Of a stretch of DNA of 64,000 nt, positions 16,012-29,245 are shown in pieces. The position numbers were made by a program, and so were the translations under genes. This DNA comes from Tetramitus jugosus. Its lineage: Eukaryota; Protista; Heterolobosea. The first letter of the stretch is position 1; every line of letters begins with the position of its first letter. The notes under the pieces are model-generated. The model did no database searches. It was not told the DNA's origin and worked only from the letters and a program-made list of their open reading frames with translations. Location of the stretch: positions 372,001-436,000 of the forward strand of contig OW569369.1 in the NCBI GenBank assembly GCA_937625935.1, given 5' to 3'.

Positions 16012-16771
16012 CAACTGAAAATGATTACACACCTACATCACACGTATCATCGTCTTTCAAGGACCACTGTTGTTTTGCTCCTGGTGTTCCTATTGACATC
16101 ATTTTCTTCGTTCAAGCAAACATCATCCTTGTTGCTTCCACGAATTGACAAGTGTCCAATTCAACATGAACAATCTTTCCAACAACAACAACAACAACAA
16201 CATCAATATCGCTCTCAACCACCATTCAAATCAAAATTTAATGTCAACCACAGTTTTAATGATCATTCTGTTGTTGTTGTTGAAACAACAAAATTTGATC
16301 AATTCAAACAACAACAGCAACTAAAGCAACAACGACATGAAGACGATCATCATCACCATCCAACGAGGAGATTCTCCTTTCCCATTTTTCATCATCAACG
16401 ATCTCATTATTATCATAACCAGTGTCCCTATATTGTCAATCGTCAGAGTCATCATTATCACCATATCACGAATACGAATGATAATAATAGCAAGAGGATG
16501 GATCGAAAAACCAAGACATTGGATTCATGGAATCAATCATCTAAGGCGCGTATCAATCATCATGATGTAGCAACGCCATCACCATTGTCATCACCGTCAC
16601 CGTCATCCTTGTTAGTTTTGGATGATTTGATGAATGATCATGTCATGTCTTCTGGGGACAATATAACGAACGACGACAAGAAGAAGAAGAGGATGATTAA
16701 GAATGATGCGACGACTACTGCCGAGGAATCGAACACGAGCCGTGTTGTTGATCAAGAGAATGACACTACTT
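16012..16771 (+). repeat. Direct repeat copy 1: duplicated 5' end of the SUN-domain gene
   Basis: Near-identical to 26637-27413 from ggaccactgttgttttgctcc to gttgttgatcaagaga..actactt; differs by a few substitutions and in-frame microsatellite indels. Confidence 0.95.
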
Positions 16772-16788
16772 TGTCTTTGGTGTCTTAG
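16021..16788 (+). pseudogene. Truncated paralogue of the SUN gene (signal peptide + low-complexity N-terminus only, 255 aa)
   Basis: ORF matches the first ~255 aa of 26645-29245, then stops just past the island junction; no SUN domain. Confidence 0.75.
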
Positions 16789-17619
16789 GCTCAGCTTCTG
16801 CGTCAACATCAGGCACCCGTGTTGACGACTTTTTGGTAGGAACCTTCTTCGGTGCAGATTGAACCGGTTTGGAGGGTGGAGTGGATTGTTCTAGATTCCC
16901 AATCCATGTCTTCGGCTAGCTTAATAATGGTCTCTACTGTACTGTTGGATGGCATGTTATGATCAAGAGGTTGTATGATAGGCTCAGTAACTGCAATGAT
17001 ATGAGTTGTGCTTTGGTTTGTGGGTACTGTTTGTGATTGAGAATTGGCTTCGACTGGATCTTTGTCGTCGCTTTTAAACCTTTCGGTTGACACCATTTCA
17101 GGGTTGGATTTGGATGTGCAAACCTGGTGGCACGGAATTTGTCTTCGAGCAGCAATTCGACTCGAATTTGATTCAATATTTCGTTGTGTCATTTTCACAG
17201 GCGGTGAATACAACGTCAAGAACATTGTCCATCGATGAAGTCGGAGCAAACAATAGACCTACCATGAGACTTTTGAATTAAATCCTTTCTGAGGGATACG
17301 AGCGTCTGATTGCATCAACAATACCATGTTCAGAGTCGGTACCAACAACTTTGATCGTACAACCTGGCTCCCATGTACTTACCTGATTGAATCATTTGAT
17401 TCACCACTGTTTGGTCTCCTGATTAATTCTCACAGGAGGTGCTGATTTGTTCTTTGAATTCCCATGTGGAGAGGACGTGAAACTCTATTGTATAATTCTT
17501 GCGTGCTCCCACCAATTATCTAATGCTCTATCATATCTACAACATAACTTTTGATGGTCCTAAAAGCAGACAGAAATTTGACCTCGAATGGAATGAAACT
17601 CGGCATTGTCGGACACTAT

Positions 17620-18170
17620 TACAGTGAAGATTTTAACATGCCGAATTTGAAGGGTTTTGTATCAGATAGAGATTTAGTGTTGACAGCCGTTACTAACAAT
17701 GGTCTGGCTCTTCAATTTGCCACTGGAGATGTGAAGGACCGTGAAGTCGTACTGACTGCTGTTAAACAGAATAGATTGGCTTGGCGTTTCGCATCCATCG
17801 ACTATACACAAGATATAGAAGTGGTTAAAGAGACAGTCCAGAACAAGGGAGAGAAATCAAAGATTTTATGAAGGAGATTGTGGGCATTAATGATCGATTC
17901 TTGGACTGGGCTTCTGATAAATAGAAGAAAGATGGAGGAAAACGATAAGGGTATCGTCAAAATGGCAGTCGCAAGCAATAGAAGCGCCTTGCAATATGCT
18001 TCCGATCAACTTCGGAACAATCAAGAGATCGTTCTCGTAGCTGTGAAGAAACAATCGAGCTCGATTCATCCCGCAACAAAAAAGATTTTGTCATAATATT
18101 AGTCACCAAAGAAAGGATTCCCTCTGCTCTTTCTCATGCATCCTCGCAACTTAGACGTGTCTCTCAGTGA
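17620..18170 (+). pseudogene. DUF4116 repeat protein remnant
   Basis: Repeated DRDLVLTAVTNNGLALQFA / DREVVLTAVKQNRLAWRFAS / DKGIVKMAVASNRSALQYASDQLRNNQEIVLVAVK units, interrupted by a stop and frameshifts. Confidence 0.8.
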
Positions 18171-19619
18171 GATCATTAATGGGTAATACGACGTTCCTTG
18201 AACATAAAACTTTTGCGCAGTCAACCATCTTGTCAGTCAACCAAAATAAACACCAAACTCAAAAAACAAAACAATCGACATGAGGCGTTCTACAAGAGGG
18301 AGGTGTAACAATGTTAGACCGCTTCTGGACAACACCACCAGCCACATCGTTGTAGAGGGCATGCACAATACCTCGCCTGTCAGGTCTATAAGAGAGTCAG
18401 AACGTCAGGAAGTTAAACTACAATCACGTCCACTGTTCAATGCTATTCATAGTTTAGGAAAGCATTCAGATTCTACCTTCAAGTGGTCAGGAGTATTGTG
18501 GACGAAATGCAAGCAAGATGTCTCGGTACAAAGGAATGTACAGCAACGGATCGTAATTTTTGTTTGTTCTTATCAAGAGGATTACTTATTATAAAAACCG
18601 AAAAAAAGTGTTTCCACACGGGAAACACTCGCTGGGCCATAAAAACGACATTTTTTGGCAAGACCTTGTACACGGCAGTTAGATACTCTTCCATCACAAA
18701 TCGGAACCGGATGCTGCTGGAGACTCCGCACATCTCGTTTTTAATACAACAAATTCATTCTCTTCTTGGAATATTGTTTTGATCCCTTCTTCAGGGATTC
18801 GTTGCGAGGGCCTCCACTACCGTCTGGCCTCACCTAGAATGCACTTACTACTGTCCTCTCCCTTCACAACATAACCTCCATAGCGACATGTTTTAAAATT
18901 GTTCAGAACTGAGTCCGGGTTTCTATTCTGCTCATCAAAAAGTGCAATACCATGACCTTCTAATTTGTCTTTTACACTCTTCTTCGCCTTCTTCTGCACA
19001 TTTCCCTAAATACACATCGCCTGTTCTTCACCACTCATTTGACAAAATCCGGAGATTGCTTCTAGGTGCAGCACGAGATATATACCTATTAATATATGCA
19101 CTCAAGCTTGACTGATGAATATTCATATTTTTGCAACGAACTTGTGTTTGTGTTTTATAGTAGTCAATCCAGTCCAACTCCTCTTTAGAAAGACAGCTCT
19201 TCCTAATTTCTAGATTTTGTCTCCACTATTTGTATCCAACTGTGCTACTTTTTTGTGGTAAATTTTTGTTGGTTAGAGTTGCAAATTGGTGTGCACGTGT
19301 TCTCGCCCAAAGATATTCAATCAAAAAAAGGAGAATACTGTATTCATTGCATAATTGGAAAGAAATTGAAAAAAATGGTAGTACACTAACTAAAGTATTA
19401 AATACTCACAATTTTCCTTCTTTTGTAATGACAAAGAAGGATTATTCTGAAACAAGTAACCCAAAATAGCGAATGGAGATCACCATTTCCTACAGAATTT
19501 TGTAACAATCATCATAAATTTCCCAAAATTTTTTTAAGCAGTAATTCTATTAAAGAGCAGAATAATAGAAGGTATGAAATTATTGACTCAAAATTTCGCC
19601 AATTCAAGCTGAGTACAAA

Positions 19620-20050
19620 TGACTCCCTTCCAATCATTCAAAATCAATCTGAGAAGGAAAAAGAGAGAGAAACTTTTATCGAACTCGAAGATGATGCCAT
19701 ATGTAAGATACAGAGACAATCTTCGAAAGAGAATTATTCTCCGATGTTGTTATGGGACAATCTGGAGGAATGTCTTATCCATCAAGTCAATCGTTTGTCA
19801 TTGAAAGTACCTCCGAAAAAGTTAAGAAGAAACCTGGTCGCCCAAAGAGGACTTCGGATGAATTCAAAGACCAAATGGACGGTCAAAGAGAACTCATTGT
19901 TTCGCAGGACAGTTCGCAAGGGATTTCTTTAGAGCAATCTCCTCTAAAACGACCAAGAGAAGACAAATTATCATCCAACAACAAGAAAAGATAGGGGAGC
20001 GATTCCGTAGATGAAGGCACAGGAATTTCAAGAACAACATCAAGTTTTGT
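19620..20050 (+). pseudogene. Fragmented AT-hook-containing ORF
   Basis: KKKPGRPKR AT-hook and PLKRPR in ORF 19752-19994; protein-like text continues across frameshifts and a stop. Confidence 0.4.
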
Positions 20051-20308
20051 GGAAATGATGCTACAGTGGCTGGTAGACCCAGACATACAATGACAGTGAC
20101 AGAGAAGAGTTTCCAGGAAATTTTTCAAAAGAATTCCGAAGTTATGTGTTTGACGAATGTCATTTCCCACCCAGAAAAAACAATACACAATAGGAGGTCC
20201 ACGGGTAGTTAAGAAAGATGAGTTTGATGAGAAATTTCACTCATTTCACGATCAAAAACCTTCGACAATCATCTCATTTGATTCATAGAGAGTTCAACCA
20301 TCGGCTGA

Positions 20309-20806
20309 TTGGGGTATTCGAAGGAAAGGATAAGCTTCTTGGGCTCTTACACCTCTTATGGCCAAGCACGAGAGGACGAAAGAAATTTAAATACTGAATT
20401 GGTATCTCTTAGAAGAGGAAAAGAGTTAAAAGGACGATGCTCGTTTCCAGTTTTCGATTCTTGGCTGAGTCGATATCACTTCTGCTCATTACACGCTGTC
20501 TTAGCAATTGGCAGGGGAATTATAAAATAATTAACATACAAGTGTATCAGAAGACAATTTCAAGAATCGACATCTGAACTTGAATGTATTGAAAAACTTA
20601 AGGACGTGGAACTTTTGTTTCTCAACTATGGAATGGATCTGGAGGAGTTGGAGTGTGTTGCCAAATCTGATGACGCAATGAGAGATCTGGCGAATTTCTG
20701 TCAAAAGTACAGTATTTCTGTCCACAAGGAGCTTATGGGGACTGTTGCTGAAATTCAAAAGTGGTATGGTAATTTGAAGAATCATTTGATGAGGAATGGA
20801 CTTTGA
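20309..20806 (+). mobile_element. Possible second Transib/RAG1-like transposase fragment
   Basis: PVF....YHFCSLHAVLAIGRGIIK resembles the PLF...xxLHxxLRI block of RAG1/Transib-like transposases; the frame continues after one stop. Confidence 0.35.
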
Positions 20807-21024
20807 ATCAGATAGAACCAGTCATCTATCACTTTTTCAATCTCAGTTCATGGTATCTCTGTCTGATCAGGGATTCTTTTCGAGGAGTTAGAATTCATTT
20901 CAAATTGACATTCTTGGTGTTTTTTGTTTTGCCTTTGAGACTAATTTCTTCTATCACTGATCCGTCATGTGATCTTGTTTCATATTTCATGGCTATATCA
21001 AGTTGTTTTTTGCGATGGATATGT

Positions 21025-21496
21025 GAAACGCAATACCACAAGTTGACTTTGGATGGAGTACAGAGAGGTTTTGGTGTCACTAGTACAGCCCGTAGCAATT
21101 GTACCACAAACCTGTTCAAGGAAGTGGCAATGAAAAATTTGAAAGAGTGTGATGGTTTGAAACTATTCAGCTGCTTTTTACGACCCCTTTTCTGTGCGCG
21201 TCATGGAAGGATAAAGGATCGAAGCCAACAAATTTCTATTCGAATCTCCATGCCAATGATGTGGTTCATACATACAGATTTATTTTGGAAAACAGCGATT
21301 AGCTAATGTTCCATTAATTGCAGATGATTACACAAAGAATGGGATGGGTCATGTTGATGCCTTCAACATGAACATGGTCAATGAAAAGCCCTTACATAGG
21401 AATGCTTCCTGGAGACGTTGTTGCTTCGATGCAATGTTGAAGGTGGTCCTTGTGAATAGTTGGATCTGTAGGGCCAAATCACATGAAACTGGTTGA
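21025..21496 (+). mobile_element. piggyBac transposase remnant (C-terminal DDD region)
   Basis: Collinear motifs across frameshifts: HKLTLD, RGFGVTSTARSN, CASWKDKGSKPTNFYSNLH (~21204), PLIADDYTKNGMGHVD (21323), WRRCCFDAMLKVVLVNSWI. Confidence 0.8.
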
Positions 21497-21511
21497 AACT
21501 ATTGAAACTAG

Positions 21512-22377
21512 GATGACTCGATAGGCCATGATGTGGACATTGTAGTTGGCGTATTCATTTTGCTTGAAACATTGTATCCATCGAGATATAGCGTTTCTGA
21601 GTGTTTGCCTGTGATGCCGTTTGTGAAAAAAGAGCATGACTCGAAGCAAAAGAACAGTGCCAAGATTCAAGGAAGAAGAAGGAGAAGGAGTGATTTTACC
21701 AACAGAATCAGAATTTGATCCAGTCTCTAAAAGACTCTATCAAGCTGTTCAAAGTATGTTGTCCACAATTTTGAAACAACGTGGAGCATAGAAATGATAT
21801 ACACAAACGTACTGGCAGTGAACGTTTAAATGATATATATTTGTAATTCCAGATGATGATCACTTTGTATTCTTCACTGCAAGCAGAGTATCTCTTGAAA
21901 ATGATGGTACATGGGGAAAAGGCAAAAGCAGATGCAATGGAGAAGTTCTTATCCAACACTAAGGGATTGACAAACTTCAAAATCATTGAGAAAGTATCCA
22001 AAGTAGATCAAACTGTTCTGGGTTATGACATCAAAATGCTGAAGGGTGGTCAGTGCGATCTAGTCATTAAAAATTACAAAGAACTGATTGATGCTCTCCC
22101 AGGATTAGATAGAAATCAGAGTGCAATTCAGAGAAACATTTGGAAACTTTGGGAAAATATCGTCAAAAAGTATTTGGAAGTGAACTTCGGTAAGCCTCAA
22201 GTTACAGCAGACGTGGATACGTTTGCTAAATTGGTTAGACCTGCAAACTCCACTACTGGTAGTTTTCCATATTATATGCATATCATATGGGCACACCTTC
22301 CAGATGACTTTTTTTTCAGATTATTCCGTGGCCACATGACCAAATTCGTGTGTATTGTGAAAAGGAGTCTACCTTAG
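21512..22377 (+). mobile_element. Transib/RAG1-like transposase remnant
   Basis: Collinear blocks across frameshifts: SVSECLPVMPFVKKE, CCPQ (21757), LCILHCKQ (21863), MLKGGQC (22039), IWKLW, PYYMHIIWAHLP (22267). Compare RAG1 NSELCCKPL..DE, CTLC, ALH, MNGN and NYFHKTLAHVP. Confidence 0.6.
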
Positions 22378-23059
22378 ATGAGGCTTATGTAGTGCTCTTT
22401 GAAAATGAAAATTGTTTGTCGTATAGCACTACGTCCATGCCAAATGATGTCTCAGTTAGCTGAAAATGTTTGTGACTCAAGCAATGTGTTACAAAGAAAC
22501 AAAAGATATGAGGAGTCTGTTGTGAAAAACAATTACATAACTGCCGAGCAAGCTAAATCATATATTAATTATGCAGTAGTCAAAAAGAAATGACGAATGT
22601 AATGCGGGAATATGCTTCACTGATTCAACTTTGTAGTAAGTTGATTAAGAAGGATTCGGATGTTACAGCTAATGAACAGGAAGGAAAATACTTATTTTTA
22701 CAATATCACGGGAAAAATGGAAGGTATCTTGCAGAAGTTATCAGGAGTTGGTGATTGAAGTTAAAGATATTGTTGGCAATGATGTTATTCTTTCTTATAT
22801 GGAATCGGATCATGAAATAGCTCTGGAGAGACAAAAGGACTTCGAAGTTATTGGCGAGTTTACTGTGGTCGATTGTGAGGAACTCGGTGATGTTGAAAAT
22901 ACAATGTAAAATAAATTAGTGTTGGAGTTGTGGAAAATGAAACAGATTTTGTGATTTATTTTTTCTTTGTGAGTGGGTTGGTTTGTGTTTTTGCACTCTC
23001 CTCCAAATTTTTGTTTTTGGCTTACCCAAAAATCAAACAACCTCATTGTGGGTCAAATT

Positions 23060-23533
23060 GATTGTGATATATCGGGAACATATTCCTGATCATGAGAGGG
23101 AAATGTCTTCAATGGACAACGTAATAGGGTAATTATTCCAATATCATCTGGATACAATTCACCCTTTGGAATATCTATACGGCAATACAACTTTCTTCCA
23201 GTAATGCTGATAGCCTTTGAATCCTTTATCTAGGGCAATATACTCATCAGAATCAAGACTCTCCCAAACGGAATTCTCTGGAAGTGCAATCAATTGAGAG
23301 TATGTCTTACTTCCAATATACGTATCTGACAAACAATCATTAGCACTACAGAACACAAGTTTTGTAAATTTATGGCCATACTTCTTTCCAGAATACAAAA
23401 TCTTCACAATGCTCTTACTAACAGATTGCTCAACTCCATCCCCTACTAAATTTATCTGAACTCCTCTCCAACTAACTCCCAGACTATCTCTAATACTCCG
23501 GGGATGTAAACAGATGAAACTTACCCATACCAT
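23060..23533 (-). mobile_element. PIF/Harbinger (IS5-like, DDE_Tnp_4) transposase remnant
   Basis: VGDG...YSGKKYGHKFTK...YIGS...SLDSDEYIALDKGFKG...VLPYR, then a frameshifted IED block; typical of DDE_Tnp_4. Confidence 0.75.
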
Positions 23534-23710
23534 GAGAGAAACAAATGTAGCGTAATTGTATCTGTAGATTTGAGATGTGTCGCAATCTGCAATCCAAGCT
23601 AAAAGTCATCAACCACATTTTGTCTGATCCATATACTCCTACGGAATTTTGTTTTGCTTCACTTTACAAAAAAAGTTTTCCGTCGACAAAAATTGTGGCC
23701 ACACAAAAAT

Positions 23711-25249
23711 ATGGCATCAACAGCAACACCACTTTTAGATGTTCTTTTCAAGGAGGGACTGTTCCATCCTGATCTCCCACCATGCTTTGTAAATCACTTT
23801 AATAGATCAACGATGCCAAACGAAGCACCGGTTGAGCCAGTTTCTATCTCTACGATGACAAGGGGTGTTCCCCATTCATTGACTATTGTCCATCCCAAGC
23901 TTCATGGTAACCTGTGTGAAGTGCTTGTGCGACACAAAACTGAAATTGTTCAGCATTTGAAAGATGCATACCCAAAAAAGGAGTTTGTCTCACTTGCTGC
24001 GATCAGTATAATCAATGCATTTGAAAACAATGTTGTTGATCAAAGTTCGCGTAGAGTTTTCATTGAAAGCAATCTAATGGAATATCGAAAATTGCATGGT
24101 TTGTATGGAAAAATACTTCTAAAGGGCACAATCTCAGATCTATATGGATCCATATACACTCATACGATTGCCTGGGCAGCTCATACAAAACCTGTAGCAA
24201 AAAAAGATCAGTCTGATGCGCTTTGGGGTAATGTGATTGACAAGGCAGTAAATTCCACATGTTACAGAGAAACCCATTCAATACCGTTTGGAACCCCAAC
24301 ATCCATTGTTATCTCAGAAATCATTCTCTCTGCTGTCGATAAACAACTACAGGAAGACCTGAAAGGCAACATTCACGGATTTAGAAATGGCGATTTCTAT
24401 GAAATTGTTGTTAGGTCTCGTGAGGAAGCATATATGATTGAAGGAAGGCTCCGTAGTGTATTGAATCTCTATAAGCTCAGAATGAATGTAGATATTCTTG
24501 AGCTTCCTCGTCCTGTTAGACCTCTGTCTCATCAAAAATATGTGGAGATTATCTCGCCTCTCGCTCAGAAAGCATTTGGAGATGATAATGAGGAGTACAT
24601 GGTCGACTTGTTTGACTCTATTCTCTCTGTGTCACAAATGTTTCCTAGAGAACATATAGTGTCATATGTTCTACGCAAATGGGAGAACCATATACCAGAC
24701 TGGATTGACACTTCATTTGAACTTCTCCTTCAGCTTCTAATCCAAGAGCCACCATCAATCAGAATTCTTTCAAAATACTTGCTACCTACCTTGATTCCTC
24801 CAAAGCAGAAGTTGTTACAAGAAGCGCTGGAAACGTTTATCATAAACGCCCTCAATGAGCTTTCACTCAATAATATTGCCTGGGCGTTATACGTTCATCT
24901 GATGGCAAAGGTATCAATTAATATGAAGCTCAAGCAATTGGACGGCTTGGACAATTCGATAATTAGCATTCTTCTGATAGAGTTGATTAATGAGAACCTA
25001 GTAACATCGGATGACAAACAAGAAATTGAGACGAAGGCAAGTGATGATTGGTTATTGTGTTACTTCAAGGGCAACAAAACAAGAGCCAAAGTATTCCGTA
25101 AGCCACAAAAGTCACAAGCAGCTATACCTGTTCGAACATCAGATCCATCAAATATACCCACACTAGATGAAAGGGTCGACAATGTGGAGAACAGGTTAAA
25201 GCAGCTAGAGAAGAAATCATCAAAATCATCGTCTGTTGATGATGTTTAA
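23711..25249 (+). CDS. Prokaryotic UG/Abi-type (AbiK/DRT4-like) reverse transcriptase homologue with substituted catalytic residues, 512 aa
   Basis: GLFHPDLPPCF, VPHSLTIVHP, ISDLYGSIYTHTIAWAAH, GNVIDK, ETHSIPFGTPTSIVISEIILSAVD, FRNGDFY (in place of RYxDDY), helical C-terminus with IAWAL and WLLCY. Intact and intronless. Confidence 0.85.
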   Translation: MASTATPLLDVLFKEGLFHPDLPPCFVNHFNRSTMPNEAPVEPVSISTMTRGVPHSLTIVHPKLHGNLCEVLVRHKTEIVQHLKDAYPKKEFVSLAAISIINAFENNVVDQSSRRVFIESNLMEYRKLHGLYGKILLKGTISDLYGSIYTHTIAWAAHTKPVAKKDQSDALWGNVIDKAVNSTCYRETHSIPFGTPTSIVISEIILSAVDKQLQEDLKGNIHGFRNGDFYEIVVRSREEAYMIEGRLRSVLNLYKLRMNVDILELPRPVRPLSHQKYVEIISPLAQKAFGDDNEEYMVDLFDSILSVSQMFPREHIVSYVLRKWENHIPDWIDTSFELLLQLLIQEPPSIRILSKYLLPTLIPPKQKLLQEALETFIINALNELSLNNIAWALYVHLMAKVSINMKLKQLDGLDNSIISILLIELINENLVTSDDKQEIETKASDDWLLCYFKGNKTRAKVFRKPQKSQAAIPVRTSDPSNIPTLDERVDNVENRLKQLEKKSSKSSSVDDV

Positions 25250-26584
25250 TTAATCATTCTCATCAGACATGTTATTCTTGATTGCAGGATCTTTCAGATT
25301 TTGAGCATCTTCCATATTCAAATGGAGATTATTGTCAATCAAATCAATAAAGTTTAGAACGACCCTACAAGATTGCGGCCTGTTTTCTTCCTTGAGCTCC
25401 GTACACCAATTGTATAGTACTTGGAACACTGGTGGTATGTTGCTACAATCGTGAGACTTATGTTTTCCACTTTTGATTCTGCATCTGATCTTGCTTTGAG
25501 AAGAAGTCGAAAAGTTCGAGTATGGATCCTCTCCGGTTATCAGCCAAGCAACCATGACTCCTAAAGAATAAATATCCGATCTTTTCGAGTAGAGTGGCTC
25601 CTCACCATCCTCCCAAGCCTCGGCGATCTCAGGGGCTAAATATCTGACAGTTCCACAGGCCCGAGATTGAACATAAGCAGTAGATTTATGTGTGGCGTGG
25701 TATTGAGTACTGGCTTCCCTAAGTGTTGTCAATCCAAAGTCAGCAAGATAGACTTGCTCAATACCAGATTCAAGTCCTATAAGAAAGTTGTCTGGTTTAA
25801 TATCTCGATGAAGCAATCCTTTGGGAAAATCTAAAGTACGAAGTTCATGAATGTAGTCTACACACTCAAAACATCTCTTTATGATTGCTAGTGGATTCGT
25901 GACCTGTTTCACCTTATAATTTACGTACTCACATAAATCACCCTTCTCATAATACCTCATTACGATATCAAAGAATGTCTTATCTTCTGTTACATATGAT
26001 GCTAAATAACGGGTACAATAGTGTGCATCTAGGTTCTTTGTTATACCTATCTCTTGAAGAATAGCAGCAAGACTGCCGGAAACAATATTGTGACGGAATC
26101 TTTTCACAGCTACAGTTTGACCATTCACCTTTGCTTTGTAAACAGCAACACCAGCGCTTTCAGTAGAAAGCGTTCGCGAAATTTTCACATCTTTTTCAGA
26201 TATCTCGCCCGATGGCTCAAGCTGCCCATCGTTCAATAGAAGGTGTTGCTTGAGAATCAATTGACATTGATGGCTAAACTTATTCATTGGCCACTCTAGA
26301 AGGCGCATCTGTGGCTTCACATAATCATGTCTTTCCAATATCTTCAATAGAATGGATGTTGACAGGCTGACCTGTGAAGCATAATTACAGAGAAAAAACG
26401 GAGTGAAACCCACACGCCCAAAAGCACCAAAGTATTCACCATTATTAACCAGAGCATCCATAATCCGGGCCACTTGATCGTTGTTGAGAACTGGACGTAT
26501 CTGGCTCAAATTCGCCATTGCTGTGTTGGCCTCCTCGTAACACGACGCATTACACAACGCCAAAACAAGTGTTTCATCAGCCAT
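25250..26584 (-). CDS. Protein kinase (ePK fold) with ~130-aa N-terminal helical domain, 444 aa
   Basis: VAVK, QEI, HRDIKPDN, DFG, GTVRYLAPE and SDIYSLG all intact; Gly-rich loop degenerate. ATG at 26584 is preceded by the host-type leader aaaaaaacaaaaacaacactc. Confidence 0.92.
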   Translation of the reverse strand: MADETLVLALCNASCYEEANTAMANLSQIRPVLNNDQVARIMDALVNNGEYFGAFGRVGFTPFFLCNYASQVSLSTSILLKILERHDYVKPQMRLLEWPMNKFSHQCQLILKQHLLLNDGQLEPSGEISEKDVKISRTLSTESAGVAVYKAKVNGQTVAVKRFRHNIVSGSLAAILQEIGITKNLDAHYCTRYLASYVTEDKTFFDIVMRYYEKGDLCEYVNYKVKQVTNPLAIIKRCFECVDYIHELRTLDFPKGLLHRDIKPDNFLIGLESGIEQVYLADFGLTTLREASTQYHATHKSTAYVQSRACGTVRYLAPEIAEAWEDGEEPLYSKRSDIYSLGVMVAWLITGEDPYSNFSTSSQSKIRCRIKSGKHKSHDCSNIPPVFQVLYNWCTELKEENRPQSCRVVLNFIDLIDNNLHLNMEDAQNLKDPAIKNNMSDEND

Positions 26585-26636
26585 GAGTGTTGTTTTTGTT
26601 TTTTTTGAAGAACCTGCAACGGATTTTTTGGAACAC

Positions 26637-27413
26637 CAACCGAAATGATTGCACTTCCACATCTCACCCATCGTCCTCAGCAACGTCTACTACGGATCAC
26701 TGTTGTTTTGCTCCTGGTGTTCCTATTGACATCATTTTCTTCATTCAAGCAAACATCATCATTGTTGCTTCCACGAATTGACAAGTGTCCAATTCAACAT
26801 GAACAATCTTTCCAACAACAACAACAACAACATCAATATTGCTCTCAATCACCATTCAAATCAAAATTTAATGTCAACCACAGTTTTAATGATCATTCTG
26901 TTGTTGTTGTTGAAACAACAAAATTTGATCAATTCAAACAACAACAGCAACTAAAGCAACAACGACATGAAGACGATCATCATCATCATCCAACGAGGAG
27001 ATTCTCCTTTCCCATTTTTCATCATCAACGATATCATTATTATCATAACCAGTGTCCCTATATTGTCAATCGTCAGAGTCATCATTATCACCATATCACG
27101 AATACGAATGATAATAATAGCAAGAGGATGGATCGAAAAACCAAGACATTGGACTCATGGAATCAATCATCTAAGGCGCGTATCAATCATCATGATGTAG
27201 CATCGCCATCACTATTGTCATCACCGTCACCGTCATCCTTGTTAGTGTTGGATGATTTGATGAATGATCATGTCATGTCTTCTGGGGACAATATAACGAA
27301 CGACAACAACAAGAAGAAGAAGCAGAAGAAGAAGACGATTAAGAATGATGCGACGACTACTGCCGAGGAAGCGAACATGAGCCGTGTTGTTGATCAAGAG
27401 AGTGGAACTACTT
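26637..27413 (+). repeat. Direct repeat copy 2 (5' end of the full-length SUN gene)
   Basis: Matches 16012-16771. Confidence 0.95.
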
Positions 27414-29245
27414 GTGCGACAACATTGATTCATGATGAACAACAGGGTCGTCAGAATGATGGTGATGGTCTGAATGACATTTTGTCATCATCAACAACAA
27501 AGACAACAACGAAACAACAGAGACAAGTACCACTGCCACTCTTTAGAGAAAAGCAACCATTGTCGTCTCCGTCTACACCGGAAAAATCAGCGACTGCACC
27601 TGCAACAGCAACGACAACTGCTTCTTACGACGCTGAAAAGAAAAAGTTTAATTTTGCAGCGTACGATGTGGGAGCAAAGGTGTTGAGTACGAATCCTGAA
27701 GCCAAGAAGGCATCTCGCATCCTGAACGAAGACAAGGACAATTATATGCTCATACCGCGACACGTGGACAAAAAGTATATTACGATTGAGTTGTCCGAGG
27801 AGATTTTGATGAATAGTTTTGCGTTGGCAAATTTTGAGTACTATAGTAGCTCTCCTCACTTGTTTCAAGTGTTGGGATCGAGAGAGTATCCGTGCAGAGC
27901 GCCCAAGTGTTACTGGGAGGTGTTGGGCACATTTGAAGCACAGAATACGAGATCTGTTCAAAAGTTTATGCTTCAGAAGCCGTTTGTGGCACGCTATGTG
28001 AAATTTCTGTTTTTGACACAGTATGGAGAGACAGAGTACTTTTGGACGCTGACTCTCATACGGGTTCATGGATCCACACTGTTGGAAGATTTGAGAGATG
28101 CTTTGTATGCGTCAGAGAATTCTGCGGCCAGTGTTGGTGAATCTACTGCTGGTGCGAGTACTACTGTTGCTTCGTTGTCTGATCCCTCGAATCATAGTGC
28201 CACCTCTAGAGTCGGCAGTACACCATTCAGTAGCAACCAGCAAAGCGGATTGAGTAGTATTTCTGGTCAGTTGGATGCAATGATATTGGATATTGAAGCC
28301 AGTTCTGTTCCAATTGATGCACGAATGAATAGTGCAAGTGGTCGTAATACCATTGTCAACTCAGATGTTGCTACTGAAGATGATGATATGACTGTTTCTC
28401 GAGTTGATGGCGAGTCGGATGATGAGGGAGCTGCACCTAGTGTTCACAAGGAGCGCAGTGACAGTCCAGAGTCCAGTGACAACATCTTAAAGTCCCTGTT
28501 AATCAAGATTCAGAGGCAGGAAGAGTCACACAAAACACTTGCTGCTGATATTCAAAAGATTCACAGCAAGTACATTCGTACGTTTCGAGATATTCAAAGA
28601 ATATTGAACAATACGTCCTACGAGCACAATATGCTAGCATCAGCAGTCTATTCGATGGCAAATGAGTTGAAGAATGAGATTATTATTGAGGTGCGCAAAG
28701 GTTACATGAAGGAGATTCACAACCTTCGTGTAATGAATGAGCACAGAATGCAACTTATGCTGCACAACCTGACGGAAGCTATTCATGGTCTTCGAACAGA
28801 CACATCTCAATCAGTGAACAGTTACAAGAAGTTTATGATTATTTGCATGAGTGTACCATTAATTCTCATGGTGTTTGTCCTCTTGCTATGTATCCCATCA
28901 TCGCAGGTTGCAATCATCAAGCAGCCAGATGTCATTAGAAAATTATCGTCGTCGAACAATAGTAGTACTGAAATTGCAAAGAGCACTCCTTCGAAGAAGA
29001 GCTCTAGAACGCGAACAATAGAAGAGCTAGAGAATGATTCCGATATAGAGAGTGATACAATCAACAAACCTGTTTTTATCAATTCAATCCAACAAGAAGA
29101 TAAGCGAGAGAGGTCATCGAGTTTTGCGGCAGAGAGCGCAGCAAAGACAAACAACCCGGTTTCACTTCTTAAGCACATGTACAAGTATTTTACGGAGCCT
29201 CAATCAGAGTCCAGCGTGACAAGGTCACCTTCTAGAGTGCGATAG
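26645..29245 (+). CDS. SLP1: Mid-SUN domain ER membrane protein (SLP1/SUCO family)
   Basis: Signal peptide; FNFAAYDVGAKVLSTNPEAKKASRILNEDKDNYML, IELSEEI, ANFEYYSS, RYVKF, LIRVHG; coiled coil; C-terminal TM. Confidence 0.9.
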   Translation: MIALPHLTHRPQQRLLRITVVLLLVFLLTSFSSFKQTSSLLLPRIDKCPIQHEQSFQQQQQQHQYCSQSPFKSKFNVNHSFNDHSVVVVETTKFDQFKQQQQLKQQRHEDDHHHHPTRRFSFPIFHHQRYHYYHNQCPYIVNRQSHHYHHITNTNDNNSKRMDRKTKTLDSWNQSSKARINHHDVASPSLLSSPSPSSLLVLDDLMNDHVMSSGDNITNDNNKKKKQKKKTIKNDATTTAEEANMSRVVDQESGTTCATTLIHDEQQGRQNDGDGLNDILSSSTTKTTTKQQRQVPLPLFREKQPLSSPSTPEKSATAPATATTTASYDAEKKKFNFAAYDVGAKVLSTNPEAKKASRILNEDKDNYMLIPRHVDKKYITIELSEEILMNSFALANFEYYSSSPHLFQVLGSREYPCRAPKCYWEVLGTFEAQNTRSVQKFMLQKPFVARYVKFLFLTQYGETEYFWTLTLIRVHGSTLLEDLRDALYASENSAASVGESTAGASTTVASLSDPSNHSATSRVGSTPFSSNQQSGLSSISGQLDAMILDIEASSVPIDARMNSASGRNTIVNSDVATEDDDMTVSRVDGESDDEGAAPSVHKERSDSPESSDNILKSLLIKIQRQEESHKTLAADIQKIHSKYIRTFRDIQRILNNTSYEHNMLASAVYSMANELKNEIIIEVRKGYMKEIHNLRVMNEHRMQLMLHNLTEAIHGLRTDTSQSVNSYKKFMIICMSVPLILMVFVLLLCIPSSQVAIIKQPDVIRKLSSSNNSSTEIAKSTPSKKSSRTRTIEELENDSDIESDTINKPVFINSIQQEDKRERSSSFAAESAAKTNNPVSLLKHMYKYFTEPQSESSVTRSPSRVR

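What the first reader, a model, noticed from the sequence alone, without database searches (positions are those of the whole stretch)
23711..25249. Bacterial antiphage-type (UG/Abi, AbiK/DRT4-like) reverse transcriptase in a eukaryote, apparently kept as a pseudo-enzyme
Seen: an intact, intronless 512-aa ORF with an A-rich host-style leader (acacaaaaatATG, no Shine-Dalgarno), embedded among intron-containing eukaryotic genes. It carries the UG/Abi family signature YxSIYTHxIxWA, the N-terminal G.F..LPP.F, IPxGxxTSxxISEIIL and a helical-repeat C-terminus (IAWAL, WLLCY). These are not features of LINE/LTR, telomerase, group II intron or rvt RTs. Polymerase chemistry looks systematically removed. 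The motif-A Asp is Thr (KGTISDLY, codon 24128). YxDD is NGDF (24386-24397). The fingers Arg residues are missing (VPHSL), and the LNxxKT turn is shortened (MNVDILELP). Both Asp substitutions need more than one nucleotide change, so a single sequencing error is unlikely, and the frame is uninterrupted while neighbouring TE fragments are shattered. Established: UG/Abi RTs are prokaryotic phage-defence proteins, and AbiK/Abi-P2 are oligomeric. Inference: a horizontally acquired defence RT retained as a non-catalytic scaffold or nucleic-acid/nucleotide sensor.
Basis: partly seen in the sequence, partly recalled or inferred. Interest (0 to 1): 0.92.

Follow-up and report, generated by a model that had tools for sequence, protein, structure and literature searches.

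The report
Polymerase-dead bacterial defence RT in amoeboflagellate
A single-celled eukaryote (a relative of Naegleria) carries one intact, apparently transcribed copy of a bacterial anti-phage "reverse transcriptase" (DRT6/DRT4 type) that has lost its DNA-polymerase residues but kept the two residues that cut RNA in the bacterial enzyme.

Summary
Window 23711-25249(+) is an intact 512-codon ORF. It matches the PADLOC Drt6 (UG12) profile end to end (E 1.6e-61) and Drt4 (E 1.6e-50). Its AlphaFold model superposes on the DRT6 hexamer subunit (Z 33.5, 2.7 Å over 437 residues). It lies in a eukaryotic chromosome between host repeats, a kinase and a SUN gene. The host is a heterolobosean. The gene is single-copy and has no orthologue among about 15 billion proteins.

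Against 159 prokaryotic relatives:
- The motif-A Asp (157/157) is Thr.
- The second Asp of YxDD is Phe.
- The motif-D Lys (159/159) is deleted.
- The fingers Arg-Arg pair is Pro-His.
- The C-terminal subdomain that senses phage SSB in DRT4 is replaced.

These map to H151/D177, which are invariant in all relatives and kept here. All 13 conserved columns around them are also kept, against 24 of 46 elsewhere (p=0.001).

My reading: a horizontally acquired DRT6-like protein, dead as a polymerase, retained and probably acting through its RNase or RNA-binding face. "Pure pseudo-enzyme" is only partly supported. Function and selection remain untested. The scan also noted this stretch from another window.

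The parts
23688..23710 (+). Probable 5' untranslated leader of the RT-like gene (A-rich, no upstream ATG)
   Evidence: The RNA-like run X4 gives one contig that starts at 23688. The sequence was read. Contigs cannot fix a true transcript end, so this is an inference.
23711..25249 (+). Intact intronless CDS of 512 codons plus TAA stop: DRT6/DRT4-like class-1 UG/Abi RT homologue
   Evidence: ORF. PADLOC Drt6 1.6e-61. PDB sequence match to the DRT6 hexamer 9wy8 at 1.1e-20. Structural Z 33.5. Single copy in the genome.
23711..24520 (+). RT-like fingers/palm lobe (residues 1-270)
   Evidence: AF2 model with pLDDT mostly above 90. Aligned colinearly with DRT6 and DRT4. DRT4 domain limits are taken from bioRxiv 10.64898/2026.10.27.754916.
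23867..23881 (+). Fingers segment VPHSL: the family's conserved Arg-Arg pair is replaced by Pro54-His55
   Evidence: The two columns are R in 122/142 and 139/142 relatives.
24128..24130 (+). Motif A: Thr140 (ACA) where the catalytic Asp stands
   Evidence: D in 157 of 157 aligned relatives. Codon read.
24143..24241 (+). Best-conserved block (residues 145-177). It holds SIYTHTIAWA with His151 (24161-24163) and GNVID with Asp177 (24239-24241), the equivalents of the DRT4 RNase dyad H160/D192.
   Evidence: Residue mapping comes from the HMMER alignment to PDB UG15/DRT4. The role of H160/D192 comes from bioRxiv 10.64898/2026.10.21.760695. H and D are invariant in 159/159 relatives. All 13 conserved columns in this block are kept, against 24/46 elsewhere, Fisher p=0.001.
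24386..24397 (+). Motif C: NGDF in place of YxDD. The first Asp (D228) is kept; the second Asp is Phe229 (TTC).
   Evidence: D228 is D in 159/159 relatives. Position 229 is D in 154, E in 3 and N in 2. Codons read.
24485..24493 (+). Motif D: N259-V260-D261. A three-residue deletion removes the invariant Lys of LNxxKT.
   Evidence: The Lys column is K in 159/159 relatives and a gap in the query.
24521..25081 (+). Alpha-helical repeat lobe (residues 271-457), ending in WLLCY
   Evidence: All-helical in the AF2 model with pLDDT of about 90. Aligned with the helical lobe of DRT6 and DRT4 up to model residue 464.
25082..25246 (+). Lineage-specific tail (residues 458-512): a basic disordered linker, then one charged helix (residues 485-505, 25163-25225). 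It replaces the conserved C-terminal subdomain of the bacterial proteins.
   Evidence: pLDDT below 50 for residues 459-488, helix at 485-505. Relatives carry GWL..D..F..L....V.FY plus an acidic tail instead. No remnant is found in other frames.
25250..26584 (-). Context, not shown to be part of the system: a convergent neighbour encoding an apparently active Ser/Thr kinase with an unassigned 160-residue N-terminal region. Its stop codon abuts the RT stop with no spacer.
   Evidence: Pfam Pkinase 4.8e-33. No close relative anywhere, best 26-35% identity. Nearest paralogue in the genome is 34-40% identical. The N-terminal region has no PADLOC hit. It lies on the same X4 contig as the RT.

Best explanation
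The gene is a bacterial class-1 UG/Abi defence 'reverse transcriptase' of the DRT6/DRT4 clade. It was acquired by horizontal transfer into the nuclear genome of a heterolobosean amoeboflagellate and is now a resident, probably transcribed, single-copy host gene.

It can no longer do two-metal DNA polymerisation. The motif-A Asp, the second YxDD Asp, the motif-D Lys and the fingers Arg pair are all gone. It has also lost the C-terminal subdomain that binds phage SSB in DRT4. It keeps the whole fold and, most tightly of all, the block carrying the His/Asp dyad that forms the RNase site of DRT4.

The most likely working model is therefore an 'effector-only' derivative: an oligomeric RNA-binding or RNA-cleaving protein uncoupled from DNA synthesis. 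Its control has been rewired, with candidates being the new basic linker plus helical tail or the adjacent kinase.

Shown: homology, fold, chromosomal residence, loss of the polymerase residues, retention of the HD block. Inferred: transcription of the RT strand, maintenance by selection, oligomerisation, RNase activity and any immune role.
For: Family and fold:
- PADLOC Drt6 1.6e-61 and Drt4 1.6e-50, full length.
- PDB DRT6 1.1e-20 and DRT4 4e-13 by sequence.
- AF2 model with pLDDT 86. Against DRT6 9wy8: Z 33.5, rmsd 2.7 Å over 437 residues. DRT4 Z 30, Abi-P2 22.9, AbiK 21.8, all other RTs 13.8 or less.

Eukaryotic residence:
- Neighbours are CLU/eIF3, PP2C, a SUN-domain gene, dynein heavy chain and a Zn2Cys6 factor.
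- The 7 kb upstream are fragments of repeats dispersed over many contigs of the same genome.
- An independent short-read contig joins host repeat, RT, kinase and the SUN 5' end with no differences.
- GC and codon use fall inside the host range.
- The host CLU protein is closest to Naegleria and Willaertia, at about 50% identity.

Polymerase loss.

RNase dyad:
- DRT4 H160/D192 come from bioRxiv 10.64898/2026.10.21.760695, which cites Rong et al., Science 2026. dNTP-dependent RNA cleavage by DRT4 is reported independently in bioRxiv 10.64898/2026.10.27.754916.
- They map to H151/D177, which are invariant in 159/159 relatives.
- The block 145-177 keeps 13/13 conserved columns, against 24/46 elsewhere, p=0.001.

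Not a drifting relic:
- Terminal branch of 2.29 substitutions per site against a median of 0.54, with the frame still open.
- About 0.0095 neutral substitutions per site would already give a 50% chance of a stop.

Expression: in run X4 depth is 0 over 22000-22984, and one contig runs from 23688 to 26658 at a depth four times that of the SUN gene.
Against: - RNase activity has been shown for DRT4 only, not for DRT6 or this protein. The HD block may be kept for structural reasons.
- In DRT4 the RNase needs the hexamer, dGTP in the polymerase pocket and the C-terminal subdomain. All of these are altered or untested here, so the site could be permanently off.
- There is no orthologue, so there is no dN/dS. 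The long branch could have accumulated in an unsampled prokaryotic lineage before a recent transfer.
- X4 is RNA by inference only. A contig cannot tell the strand, so the coverage could be a long kinase 3' UTR running antisense through the RT.
- The query keeps only 37 of 59 strongly conserved family columns, against a median of 56.
- The block appears at about 0.6 times the depth of the SUN gene in the DNA-like runs. It may be hemizygous, which would fit a dispensable gene.
Confidence: 0.45

Rival explanations
1. One reading: a true pseudo-enzyme. The protein has no catalysis of any kind and is kept as an oligomeric scaffold or as a nucleic-acid or nucleotide sensor.
For: Two of the three catalytic carboxylates, the motif-D Lys and the fingers Arg pair are lost. 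The fold is fully retained. In DRT4 the RNase is inactive unless DNA synthesis, dGTP and the C-terminal subdomain cooperate, and all of these are lost here. Prp8 is a precedent for an RT fold kept for binding only (PMC3417536).
Against: The residues most faithfully kept are those of the second active site, H151 and D177, with 13/13 conserved columns around them. The nucleotide-binding elements a 'nucleotide sensor' would need (fingers Arg pair, motif A) are among the parts destroyed.
Confidence: 0.25
2. A non-functional relic: a fairly recent transfer, or a copy already defective in the donor, that has not yet picked up a stop codon. It would be carried in a repeat-rich, possibly hemizygous island.
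For: - No orthologue and no paralogue.
- Only 37/59 conserved family columns are kept.
- It is embedded in a patchwork of repeat fragments between two copies of the SUN 5' end that are about 97% identical.
- Depth is about 0.6 times that of the SUN gene in the DNA-like runs.
- The codon-use test is weak, because bacterial homologues of similar GC score almost as well.
Against: - The open frame of 512 codons has a chance probability of about 9e-16 at this base composition. It would tolerate only about 1% neutral divergence.
- None of 159 prokaryotic relatives lacks the motif-A Asp, so an already dead donor copy is not supported.
- The losses are concentrated in polymerase and sensor elements, while the HD block is untouched.
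- The gene is covered end to end by an RNA-like contig whose end lies 23 nt before the ATG.
- The model is confident along the whole fold.
Confidence: 0.2
3. Still an active, unconventional polymerase or nucleotidyl-transferase that uses D228 together with other acidic residues (for example D143 or E231).
For: D228 is retained. Asp143 lies three residues after the lost motif-A Asp, and E231 follows motif C. Class-1 UG/Abi enzymes already use unusual protein-primed, untemplated chemistry (PMC12783706).
Against: - Mutating the DD pair abolishes DRT6 and DRT4 activity and defence.
- The motif-D Lys and the triphosphate-binding Arg pair are also gone.
- Position 143 is not conserved in the family, and E231 is also present in the active relatives.
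- The aligned position of the DRT4 priming Tyr125 is Phe117, although the alignment is weak there.
Confidence: 0.05
4. An artefact: a bacterial contaminant or a chimeric join in the assembly.
For: All detectable homologues are prokaryotic or phage-borne.
Against: - It lies more than 395 kb into a contig full of eukaryotic genes.
- Host-specific dispersed repeats reach to within about 80 bp of the ATG.
- A short-read contig bridges repeat, RT, kinase and SUN with zero differences and a single depth figure for the whole contig. The stretch is held by runs from three samples.
- Composition is host-like.
Confidence: 0.02

Closest known systems
DRT6 (UG12), for example the Sphingopyxis protein solved as a hexamer (PDB 9wy8)
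   Same: Best profile, sequence and structure match: Drt6 1.6e-61, PDB 1.1e-20, Z 33.5 with rmsd 2.7 Å over 437 residues. Same two-lobe architecture (RT fingers/palm plus a helical-repeat lobe, no thumb), the same SIYTH..W and GNxxD signature, and a similar length.
   Different: DRT6 is a bacterial single-gene abortive-infection system that makes protein-primed untemplated ssDNA and needs its DD pair (PMC12783706). The window protein lacks the motif-A Asp, the second Asp, the motif-D Lys, the fingers Arg pair and the conserved C-terminal subdomain. It is only 20-30% identical to any relative and sits in a eukaryote.
DRT4 (UG15), E. coli
   Same: Second-best match (Drt4 1.6e-50, Z about 30). 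The RNase dyad H160/D192 described for DRT4 aligns with H151/D177 here.
   Different: In DRT4 the RNase is licensed by the enzyme's own ssDNA product, by dGTP and by phage SSB binding to the C-terminal subdomain. The parts needed for all three are missing or replaced here. The NCBIfam Drt4 equivalog score is 128.8 bits, against a cut-off of 450.
AbiK and Abi-P2 (class-1 Abi polymerases)
   Same: Same overall fold (Z 21-23) and the same family signature in the fingers.
   Different: Clearly more distant than DRT6 and DRT4 (E 1e-27 and 8e-21). They are active polymerases with different helical lobes.
rvt genes (UG37), the only UG/Abi-related RTs reported from eukaryotes (PMC9226505)
   Same: Single-copy, non-mobile RT-like genes in eukaryotic chromosomes, with a coiled-coil appendage.
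   Different: By the published description (PMC9226505), rvt proteins show protein-primed DNA synthesis in vitro, and their coiled coil is N-terminal; neither feature was tested here. No UG37 model is among the 25 families listed for this protein, and the whole length is explained by Drt6/Drt4 profiles.
Prp8 (RT-derived spliceosome core with a disrupted active site)
   Same: An RT fold kept in a eukaryote after loss of the polymerase residues.
   Different: Prp8 is ancient, universal and derived from group II intron RT, and it is part of a large RNP. This gene is a lineage-restricted, defence-type class-1 UG/Abi protein.

Membership tests
UG/Abi class 1, DRT6/DRT4 clade | Full-length match to the family profiles | tested here: met
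   PADLOC Drt6 1.6e-61 (residues 9-453 on profile positions 4-447 of 511). Five Drt4 models score between 1.6e-50 and 7.7e-32.
UG/Abi class 1, DRT6/DRT4 clade | Score above the curated equivalog cut-off (NCBIfam Drt4 NF041749) | tested here: not met
   128.8 bits against a cut-off of 450. It is a divergent relative, not an equivalog.
UG/Abi class 1, DRT6/DRT4 clade | RT fingers/palm fused to an alpha-helical repeat lobe, with no thumb | tested here: met
   AF2 model with pLDDT 86. Z 33.5 to DRT6 and 30 to DRT4 over about 430 residues.
UG/Abi class 1, DRT6/DRT4 clade | Catalytic carboxylates (motif-A Asp and the YxDD pair) plus the motif-D Lys | tested here: not met
   T140, D228 kept, F229, Lys deleted. 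Relatives have D in 157/157, D in 159/159, D in 154/159 and K in 159/159.
UG/Abi class 1, DRT6/DRT4 clade | Family signature SIYTHxIPWA ... GNxxD, which contains the His/Asp RNase dyad of DRT4 | tested here: met
   H151 and D177 are kept, and 13/13 conserved columns in residues 145-177 are kept.
UG/Abi class 1, DRT6/DRT4 clade | Protein-priming residue (Tyr125 in DRT4) | tested here: inconclusive
   The aligned residue is Phe117, but this stretch aligns poorly and the priming residue differs among class-1 enzymes.
UG/Abi class 1, DRT6/DRT4 clade | Conserved C-terminal subdomain after WLLxYE (the SSB-sensing CTD in DRT4) | tested here: not met
   It is replaced by a basic linker plus one charged helix. 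No remnant is found in other frames.
UG/Abi class 1, DRT6/DRT4 clade | Homo-hexamer (dimer of trimers) | tested here: inconclusive
   Only a dimer of residues 1-458 fitted the size limit, and that job gave no verdict. A hexamer model or SEC/cryo-EM is needed.
UG/Abi class 1, DRT6/DRT4 clade | Prokaryotic or phage host and defence-island context | tested here: not met
   The context is a eukaryotic chromosome. All 80 genome loci and 41 viral loci of relatives are prokaryotic or phage-sized.
Retroelement, telomerase or group II RTs (Pfam RVT_1 type) | Match to RVT_1 and closest fold among these RTs | tested here: not met
   No RVT_1 hit at E up to 1. Group II intron, DGR, retron, R2, LINE-1 and telomerase structures reach Z 13.8 or less, against 33.5 for DRT6.
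rvt (UG37) | Best profile match to UG37, an N-terminal coiled coil and intact catalytic motifs | tested here: not met
   No UG37 model is among the 25 PADLOC families listed, the weakest of which has E 0.023. The helix appendage is C-terminal. The catalytic motifs are lost.

The most novel reading that the evidence does not exclude
A eukaryote has turned a bacterial abortive-infection RT into an 'effector-only' immune RNase. This would be a DRT6-like oligomer whose guanosine-directed RNase site works without any DNA synthesis. It would be switched by a new input, either the appended basic and helical tail or phosphorylation by the abutting orphan kinase. It could serve against the giant viruses that infect amoebae, whose SSB proteins are related to the phage SSBs that trigger DRT4. 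If so, it would be the first class-1 UG/Abi defence RT working in a eukaryote, and a natural separation-of-function mutant showing that the RNase is the ancestral effector of this clade.
Probability: 0.15. Interest if true: 0.9.

Novelty: new variant of a known kind. Interest (0 to 1): 0.72.

Why it matters
Class-1 UG/Abi enzymes (AbiK, DRT4, DRT6) are treated as strictly prokaryotic. The reference census removed eukaryotic sequences on purpose (PMC9226505), and I found no report of a DRT4/DRT6-type gene in a eukaryote in the papers searched. This gene adds one more bacterial immune module to those that crossed into eukaryotes, in a bacterivorous amoeboflagellate lineage. The same genome also holds four intact GmrSD-type ORFs.

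More specifically, it is a natural experiment on a mechanism published only in 2026. Nature has removed the polymerase centre and the SSB-sensing subdomain, yet preserved the His/Asp RNase block. If the protein cuts RNA, that would show the RNase can be uncoupled from DNA polymerisation and would give a minimal scaffold for studying it. If it does not, the gene is a clean case of an RT fold recycled as a binding module.

Tried and rejected
- **Homodimer prediction.** Residues 1-458, two copies. It gave no answer (score 0.00, controls not run), so it is not evidence either way.
- **Orthologue searches.** These were the word-index search of 5.8 billion proteins, exhaustive HMMER over 1.84 billion representatives, an exact-sequence look-up, a metagenome contig scan with the single protein, and cluster look-ups of the ten best hits. 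No relative is above about 36% identity, and every top hit is an unnamed metagenome singleton. dN/dS was therefore impossible.
- **Donor search by tree.** The query sits on a very long branch joined to another long branch (P0022, SH-aLRT 83, flagged as possible long-branch attraction). Relatives come from at least 17 phyla of Bacteria and Archaea. No donor can be named. The contigs of P0022 and P0011 are short and prokaryote-like.
- **Virus vector.** The 41 IMG/VR loci with relatives are phage- or prophage-sized and no closer than the bacterial ones.
- **Empty-site test in a relative.** A 35-kb contig of an organism with 64% identical CLU keeps the CLU-WD40 pair, but synteny ends there. A second contig shows no synteny.
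- **Codon adaptation.** The RT lies in the host range, but bacterial homologues of similar GC score nearly as well, so the test is weak.
- **Host identification.** The ESM Atlas search was uninformative. Rfam and tRNA scans of the window found nothing.
- **Kinase as a defence partner.** PADLOC hits are generic kinase-domain matches and the N-terminal region has none. A functional link between RT and kinase remains pure conjecture.
- **Science 2026 paper on the DRT4 RNase.** It is not held in the library. Its claims are taken second-hand from two preprints.
Full report
**What is there.** Window 23711-25249(+) is an uninterrupted ORF of 512 codons. The frame is closed just upstream of 23654, and ATG 23711 is preceded by an A-rich leader. 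Pfam finds no RVT_1 domain. The defence-system profiles match over nearly the whole length:
- PADLOC Drt6 (UG12): E 1.6e-61, residues 9-453 on profile positions 4-447 of 511.
- Drt4 (UG15): 1.6e-50. UG14: 2.5e-30. AbiP2: 1.2e-27. AbiK: 7.7e-21.
- NCBIfam Drt4: 2.9e-37, which at 128.8 bits is far below the equivalog cut-off of 450.

Against solved structures, the best sequence match is the hexameric DRT6 (9wy8, 1.1e-20), followed by DRT4/UG15 (about 4e-13), Abi-P2 and AbiK. An AlphaFold2 model built on 127 sequences is confident (pLDDT 86, pTM 0.84) except for residues 459-488. It superposes on DRT6 with Z 33.5 (rmsd 2.7 Å over 437 residues), on DRT4 with Z about 30, on Abi-P2 with 22.9 and on AbiK with 21.8. 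Group II, DGR, retron, R2, LINE-1 and telomerase RTs reach 13.8 at most. The nearest kin are DRT6 and DRT4 rather than AbiK.

**It is in a eukaryote.** The window codes for the following:
- a CLU/eIF3-p135 protein;
- PP2C;
- a WW/WH2 protein;
- a SUN-domain protein;
- a 4218-residue cytoplasmic dynein heavy chain;
- a RhoGEF;
- a Zn2Cys6 factor.

The genome is 26.35 Mb in 56 contigs, and the gene lies about 395.7 kb into contig C26 as a single copy. The genome has radial-spoke genes but no light-harvesting, silicon-transporter or class-1 chitin-synthase genes. The CLU domain is closest, among named proteins, to Naegleria gruberi and Willaertia magna (50%), N. lovaniensis and N. fowleri (48-49%), Acrasis kona (44%) and Percolomonas (41%). 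The host is therefore a heterolobosean amoeboflagellate outside those genera.

The 6.9 kb upstream of the gene are a mosaic of pieces of repeats found on many other contigs of this genome, at 66-99% identity, reaching to within about 80 bp of the ATG. In two DNA-like runs of one sample, a single 3797-nt contig joins host repeat, RT, kinase and the SUN 5' end without one difference. Runs from two further samples of the same study also hold the stretch. GC (0.398), GC3 (0.365) and codon adaptation (0.716) lie within the range of 16 host genes in the window. This last test is weak, because bacterial homologues of similar GC score a median of 0.691. Contamination or a chimeric join is thus very unlikely.

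**No orthologue, no donor.** An exhaustive HMMER search of 1.84 billion cluster representatives gave 2296 hits, but none above about 36% identity (best E 4.9e-32). The word-index search, the exact look-up and a metagenome scan for close kin found nothing nearer. Eighty loci from species-representative genomes are all bacterial or archaeal, from many phyla, at 24-31% identity. Forty-one viral contigs are phage-sized. In a maximum-likelihood tree the query has an end branch of 2.29 substitutions per site, against a median of 0.54. It joins another long branch with weak support and an explicit long-branch warning, so no donor lineage can be named. The ten best hits are unnamed metagenome singletons, and two whose contigs I fetched look prokaryotic.

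**The polymerase centre is gone.** In an alignment with 159 relatives:
- The motif-A Asp is D in 157 of 157; the query has Thr140.
- The second Asp of YxDD is D in 154 (E in 3, N in 2); the query has Phe229.
- The first Asp, D228, is kept.
- The Lys of LNxxKT is K in 159 of 159 and falls in a three-residue deletion.
- The fingers Arg-Arg pair is Pro54-His55.
- GPDTS has become GTPTS.

The codons ACA and TTC each need two changes from GAY, and three independent contig sets agree with the assembly, so sequencing error is excluded. The query is the only sequence of the 160 without the motif-A Asp. Mutating the DD pair kills DRT6 and DRT4 activity and defence (PMC12783706; PMC9226505). I regard canonical polymerisation as lost (about 85%).

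Two preprints of October 2026, both citing Rong et al. (Science 2026, not held here), report that DRT4's effector is an intrinsic RNase. Its 'HD' dyad, H160 and D192, lies at the trimer-trimer interface between fingers and helical lobe. [quoted passage not shown]

Counting along the HMMER alignment to the DRT4 chain, H160 is the His of the S-I-Y-T/S-H signature and D192 the Asp of G-N-x-x-D. In the window protein these are H151 and D177. Both are invariant in all 159 relatives, DRT6-like ones included, and both are kept.

Of 59 family columns conserved at 85% or more, the query keeps 37 (relatives: median 56). Yet all 13 that fall in residues 145-177 are kept, against 24 of 46 elsewhere (Fisher p=0.001; p=0.009 for the strict 151-177 interval). 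This interval was chosen after seeing the data, but its limits follow the two published catalytic residues.

In contrast, the conserved C-terminal subdomain (GWL..D..F..L....V.FY plus an acidic tail) is replaced. The replacement is a basic disordered linker and one charged helix (residues 485-505), with no remnant in other frames. So the polymerase and the trigger-sensing parts are lost, while the RNase block is the best-preserved part.

**Is it alive?**
- At this base composition an open frame of 512 codons has a chance probability of about 9e-16. About 4.8% of point substitutions in this CDS create stops, so roughly 1% neutral divergence already gives even odds of a stop. The branch is very long, yet the frame is open and the model folds confidently throughout.
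- Run X4 behaves like RNA. Its longest contig is 9.8 kb. Depth is zero over the repeat DNA at 22000-22984. One contig runs from 23688 (23 nt before the RT ATG) to 26658 (74 nt beyond the kinase ATG), at about four times the depth of the SUN gene.
- Contigs give neither strand nor per-gene level. The RT and kinase stop codons abut (25247-25249 and 25250-25252), so their transcripts must overlap. Sense transcription of the RT is probable, not shown.
- Against function: there is no orthologue, so no dN/dS. The long branch could predate a recent transfer. In the DNA-like runs the RT-kinase contig has about 0.6 times the depth of the SUN 3' part, which shows two alleles. The block may therefore be hemizygous.

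**Surroundings.**
- A 750-bp copy of the SUN gene's first 250 codons (16021-16772, about 97% identical, starting at the ATG) lies 10.6 kb upstream of the complete SUN gene (26645-). It brackets the repeat patchwork, the RT and the kinase.
- The kinase has the usual catalytic motifs in its translation (HRD, DFG, APE). It has no close relative anywhere (best 26-35%). Its nearest genomic paralogue is 34-40% identical.
- Its PADLOC matches are generic kinase-domain hits, and its N-terminal 160 residues match nothing. A functional RT-kinase pair is therefore conjecture.
- The genome also holds four intact GmrSD-type ORFs, so this is not its only prokaryote-type defence gene.

My best reading (0.45) is a retained, polymerase-dead DRT6-like protein acting through its conserved RNase or RNA-binding face with rewired control. 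The rivals are:
- an inert scaffold or sensor (0.25);
- an intact but functionless relic (0.20);
- an unconventional active polymerase (0.05);
- an artefact (0.02).

I found no earlier report of a DRT4/DRT6-type gene in a eukaryote. The UG/Abi census excluded eukaryotic sequences by design, and only rvt (UG37) is known from eukaryotes. Searches of the paper library gave nothing closer.

Noticed in passing
window 16021-16772 and 26645-27413: A direct duplication (about 97% identical, starting at the ATG) of the first ~250 codons of the SUN-domain gene. The upstream copy is an intact 255-codon ORF. The two copies bracket about 9.9 kb holding repeat fragments, the RT-like gene and the kinase. Loose ends in runs X3 and X4 show that the upstream copy is present in those runs too.
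   Followed up: partly
window 22931-26727 versus 27469-27900: In the DNA-like runs X1 and X2, the RT-kinase contig has word depth 32.2 and 16.6, while the SUN 3' part has 54.7 and 29.2 and shows a second allele (3-nt deletion at 27503; substitutions at 27514, 27571 and 27703). The RT-kinase block may be hemizygous, or its other haplotype may be too diverged to lay.
   Followed up: no
window 18753-18827: A 75-nt unit with at least 20 copies at 95-99% identity on many contigs of the genome. It is tRNA-sized, but ARAGORN does not call it a tRNA and Rfam has no match.
   Followed up: partly
window 16789-23700: A patchwork of fragments of dispersed host repeats, with 53 matches on other contigs at 66-99% identity. 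The only Pfam hit among its ORFs is a DUF4116 fragment (17551-17868). The transposon superfamilies named in earlier notes were not confirmed.
   Followed up: partly
window 25247-25252 and 26585-26644: The RT and kinase stop codons abut with no spacer, so their 3' ends must overlap as transcripts. The kinase and SUN start codons are only 60 bp apart and divergent.
   Followed up: no
window 25250-26584 (-): An orphan Ser/Thr kinase whose translation shows the usual catalytic motifs (HRD, DFG, APE), but with no relative above about 35% identity in 5.8 billion proteins. Its 160-residue N-terminal region has no Pfam or PADLOC match.
   Followed up: partly
G000 C9:332708-335772, C38:10022-10858, C30:16957-17793: Four intact ORFs (622-745 aa) with a GmrSD_N/DUF262 domain, two of them in tandem. 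These are further prokaryote-type defence genes in this eukaryotic genome.
   Followed up: partly
window 22942-22997 and 26593: Polymorphisms between runs. A 54-bp stretch is replaced by ATGCA in X1-X3. One base is missing at 26593, in the kinase leader, in X4.
   Followed up: no
L132 (JGI metagenome contig, 35 kb) and P0280 (Logan): Uncultured relatives of the host. One has a CLU protein 84% identical. Another, at 64%, has a contig that keeps the divergent CLU-WD40 gene pair but not the SUN/RT neighbourhood.
   Followed up: partly
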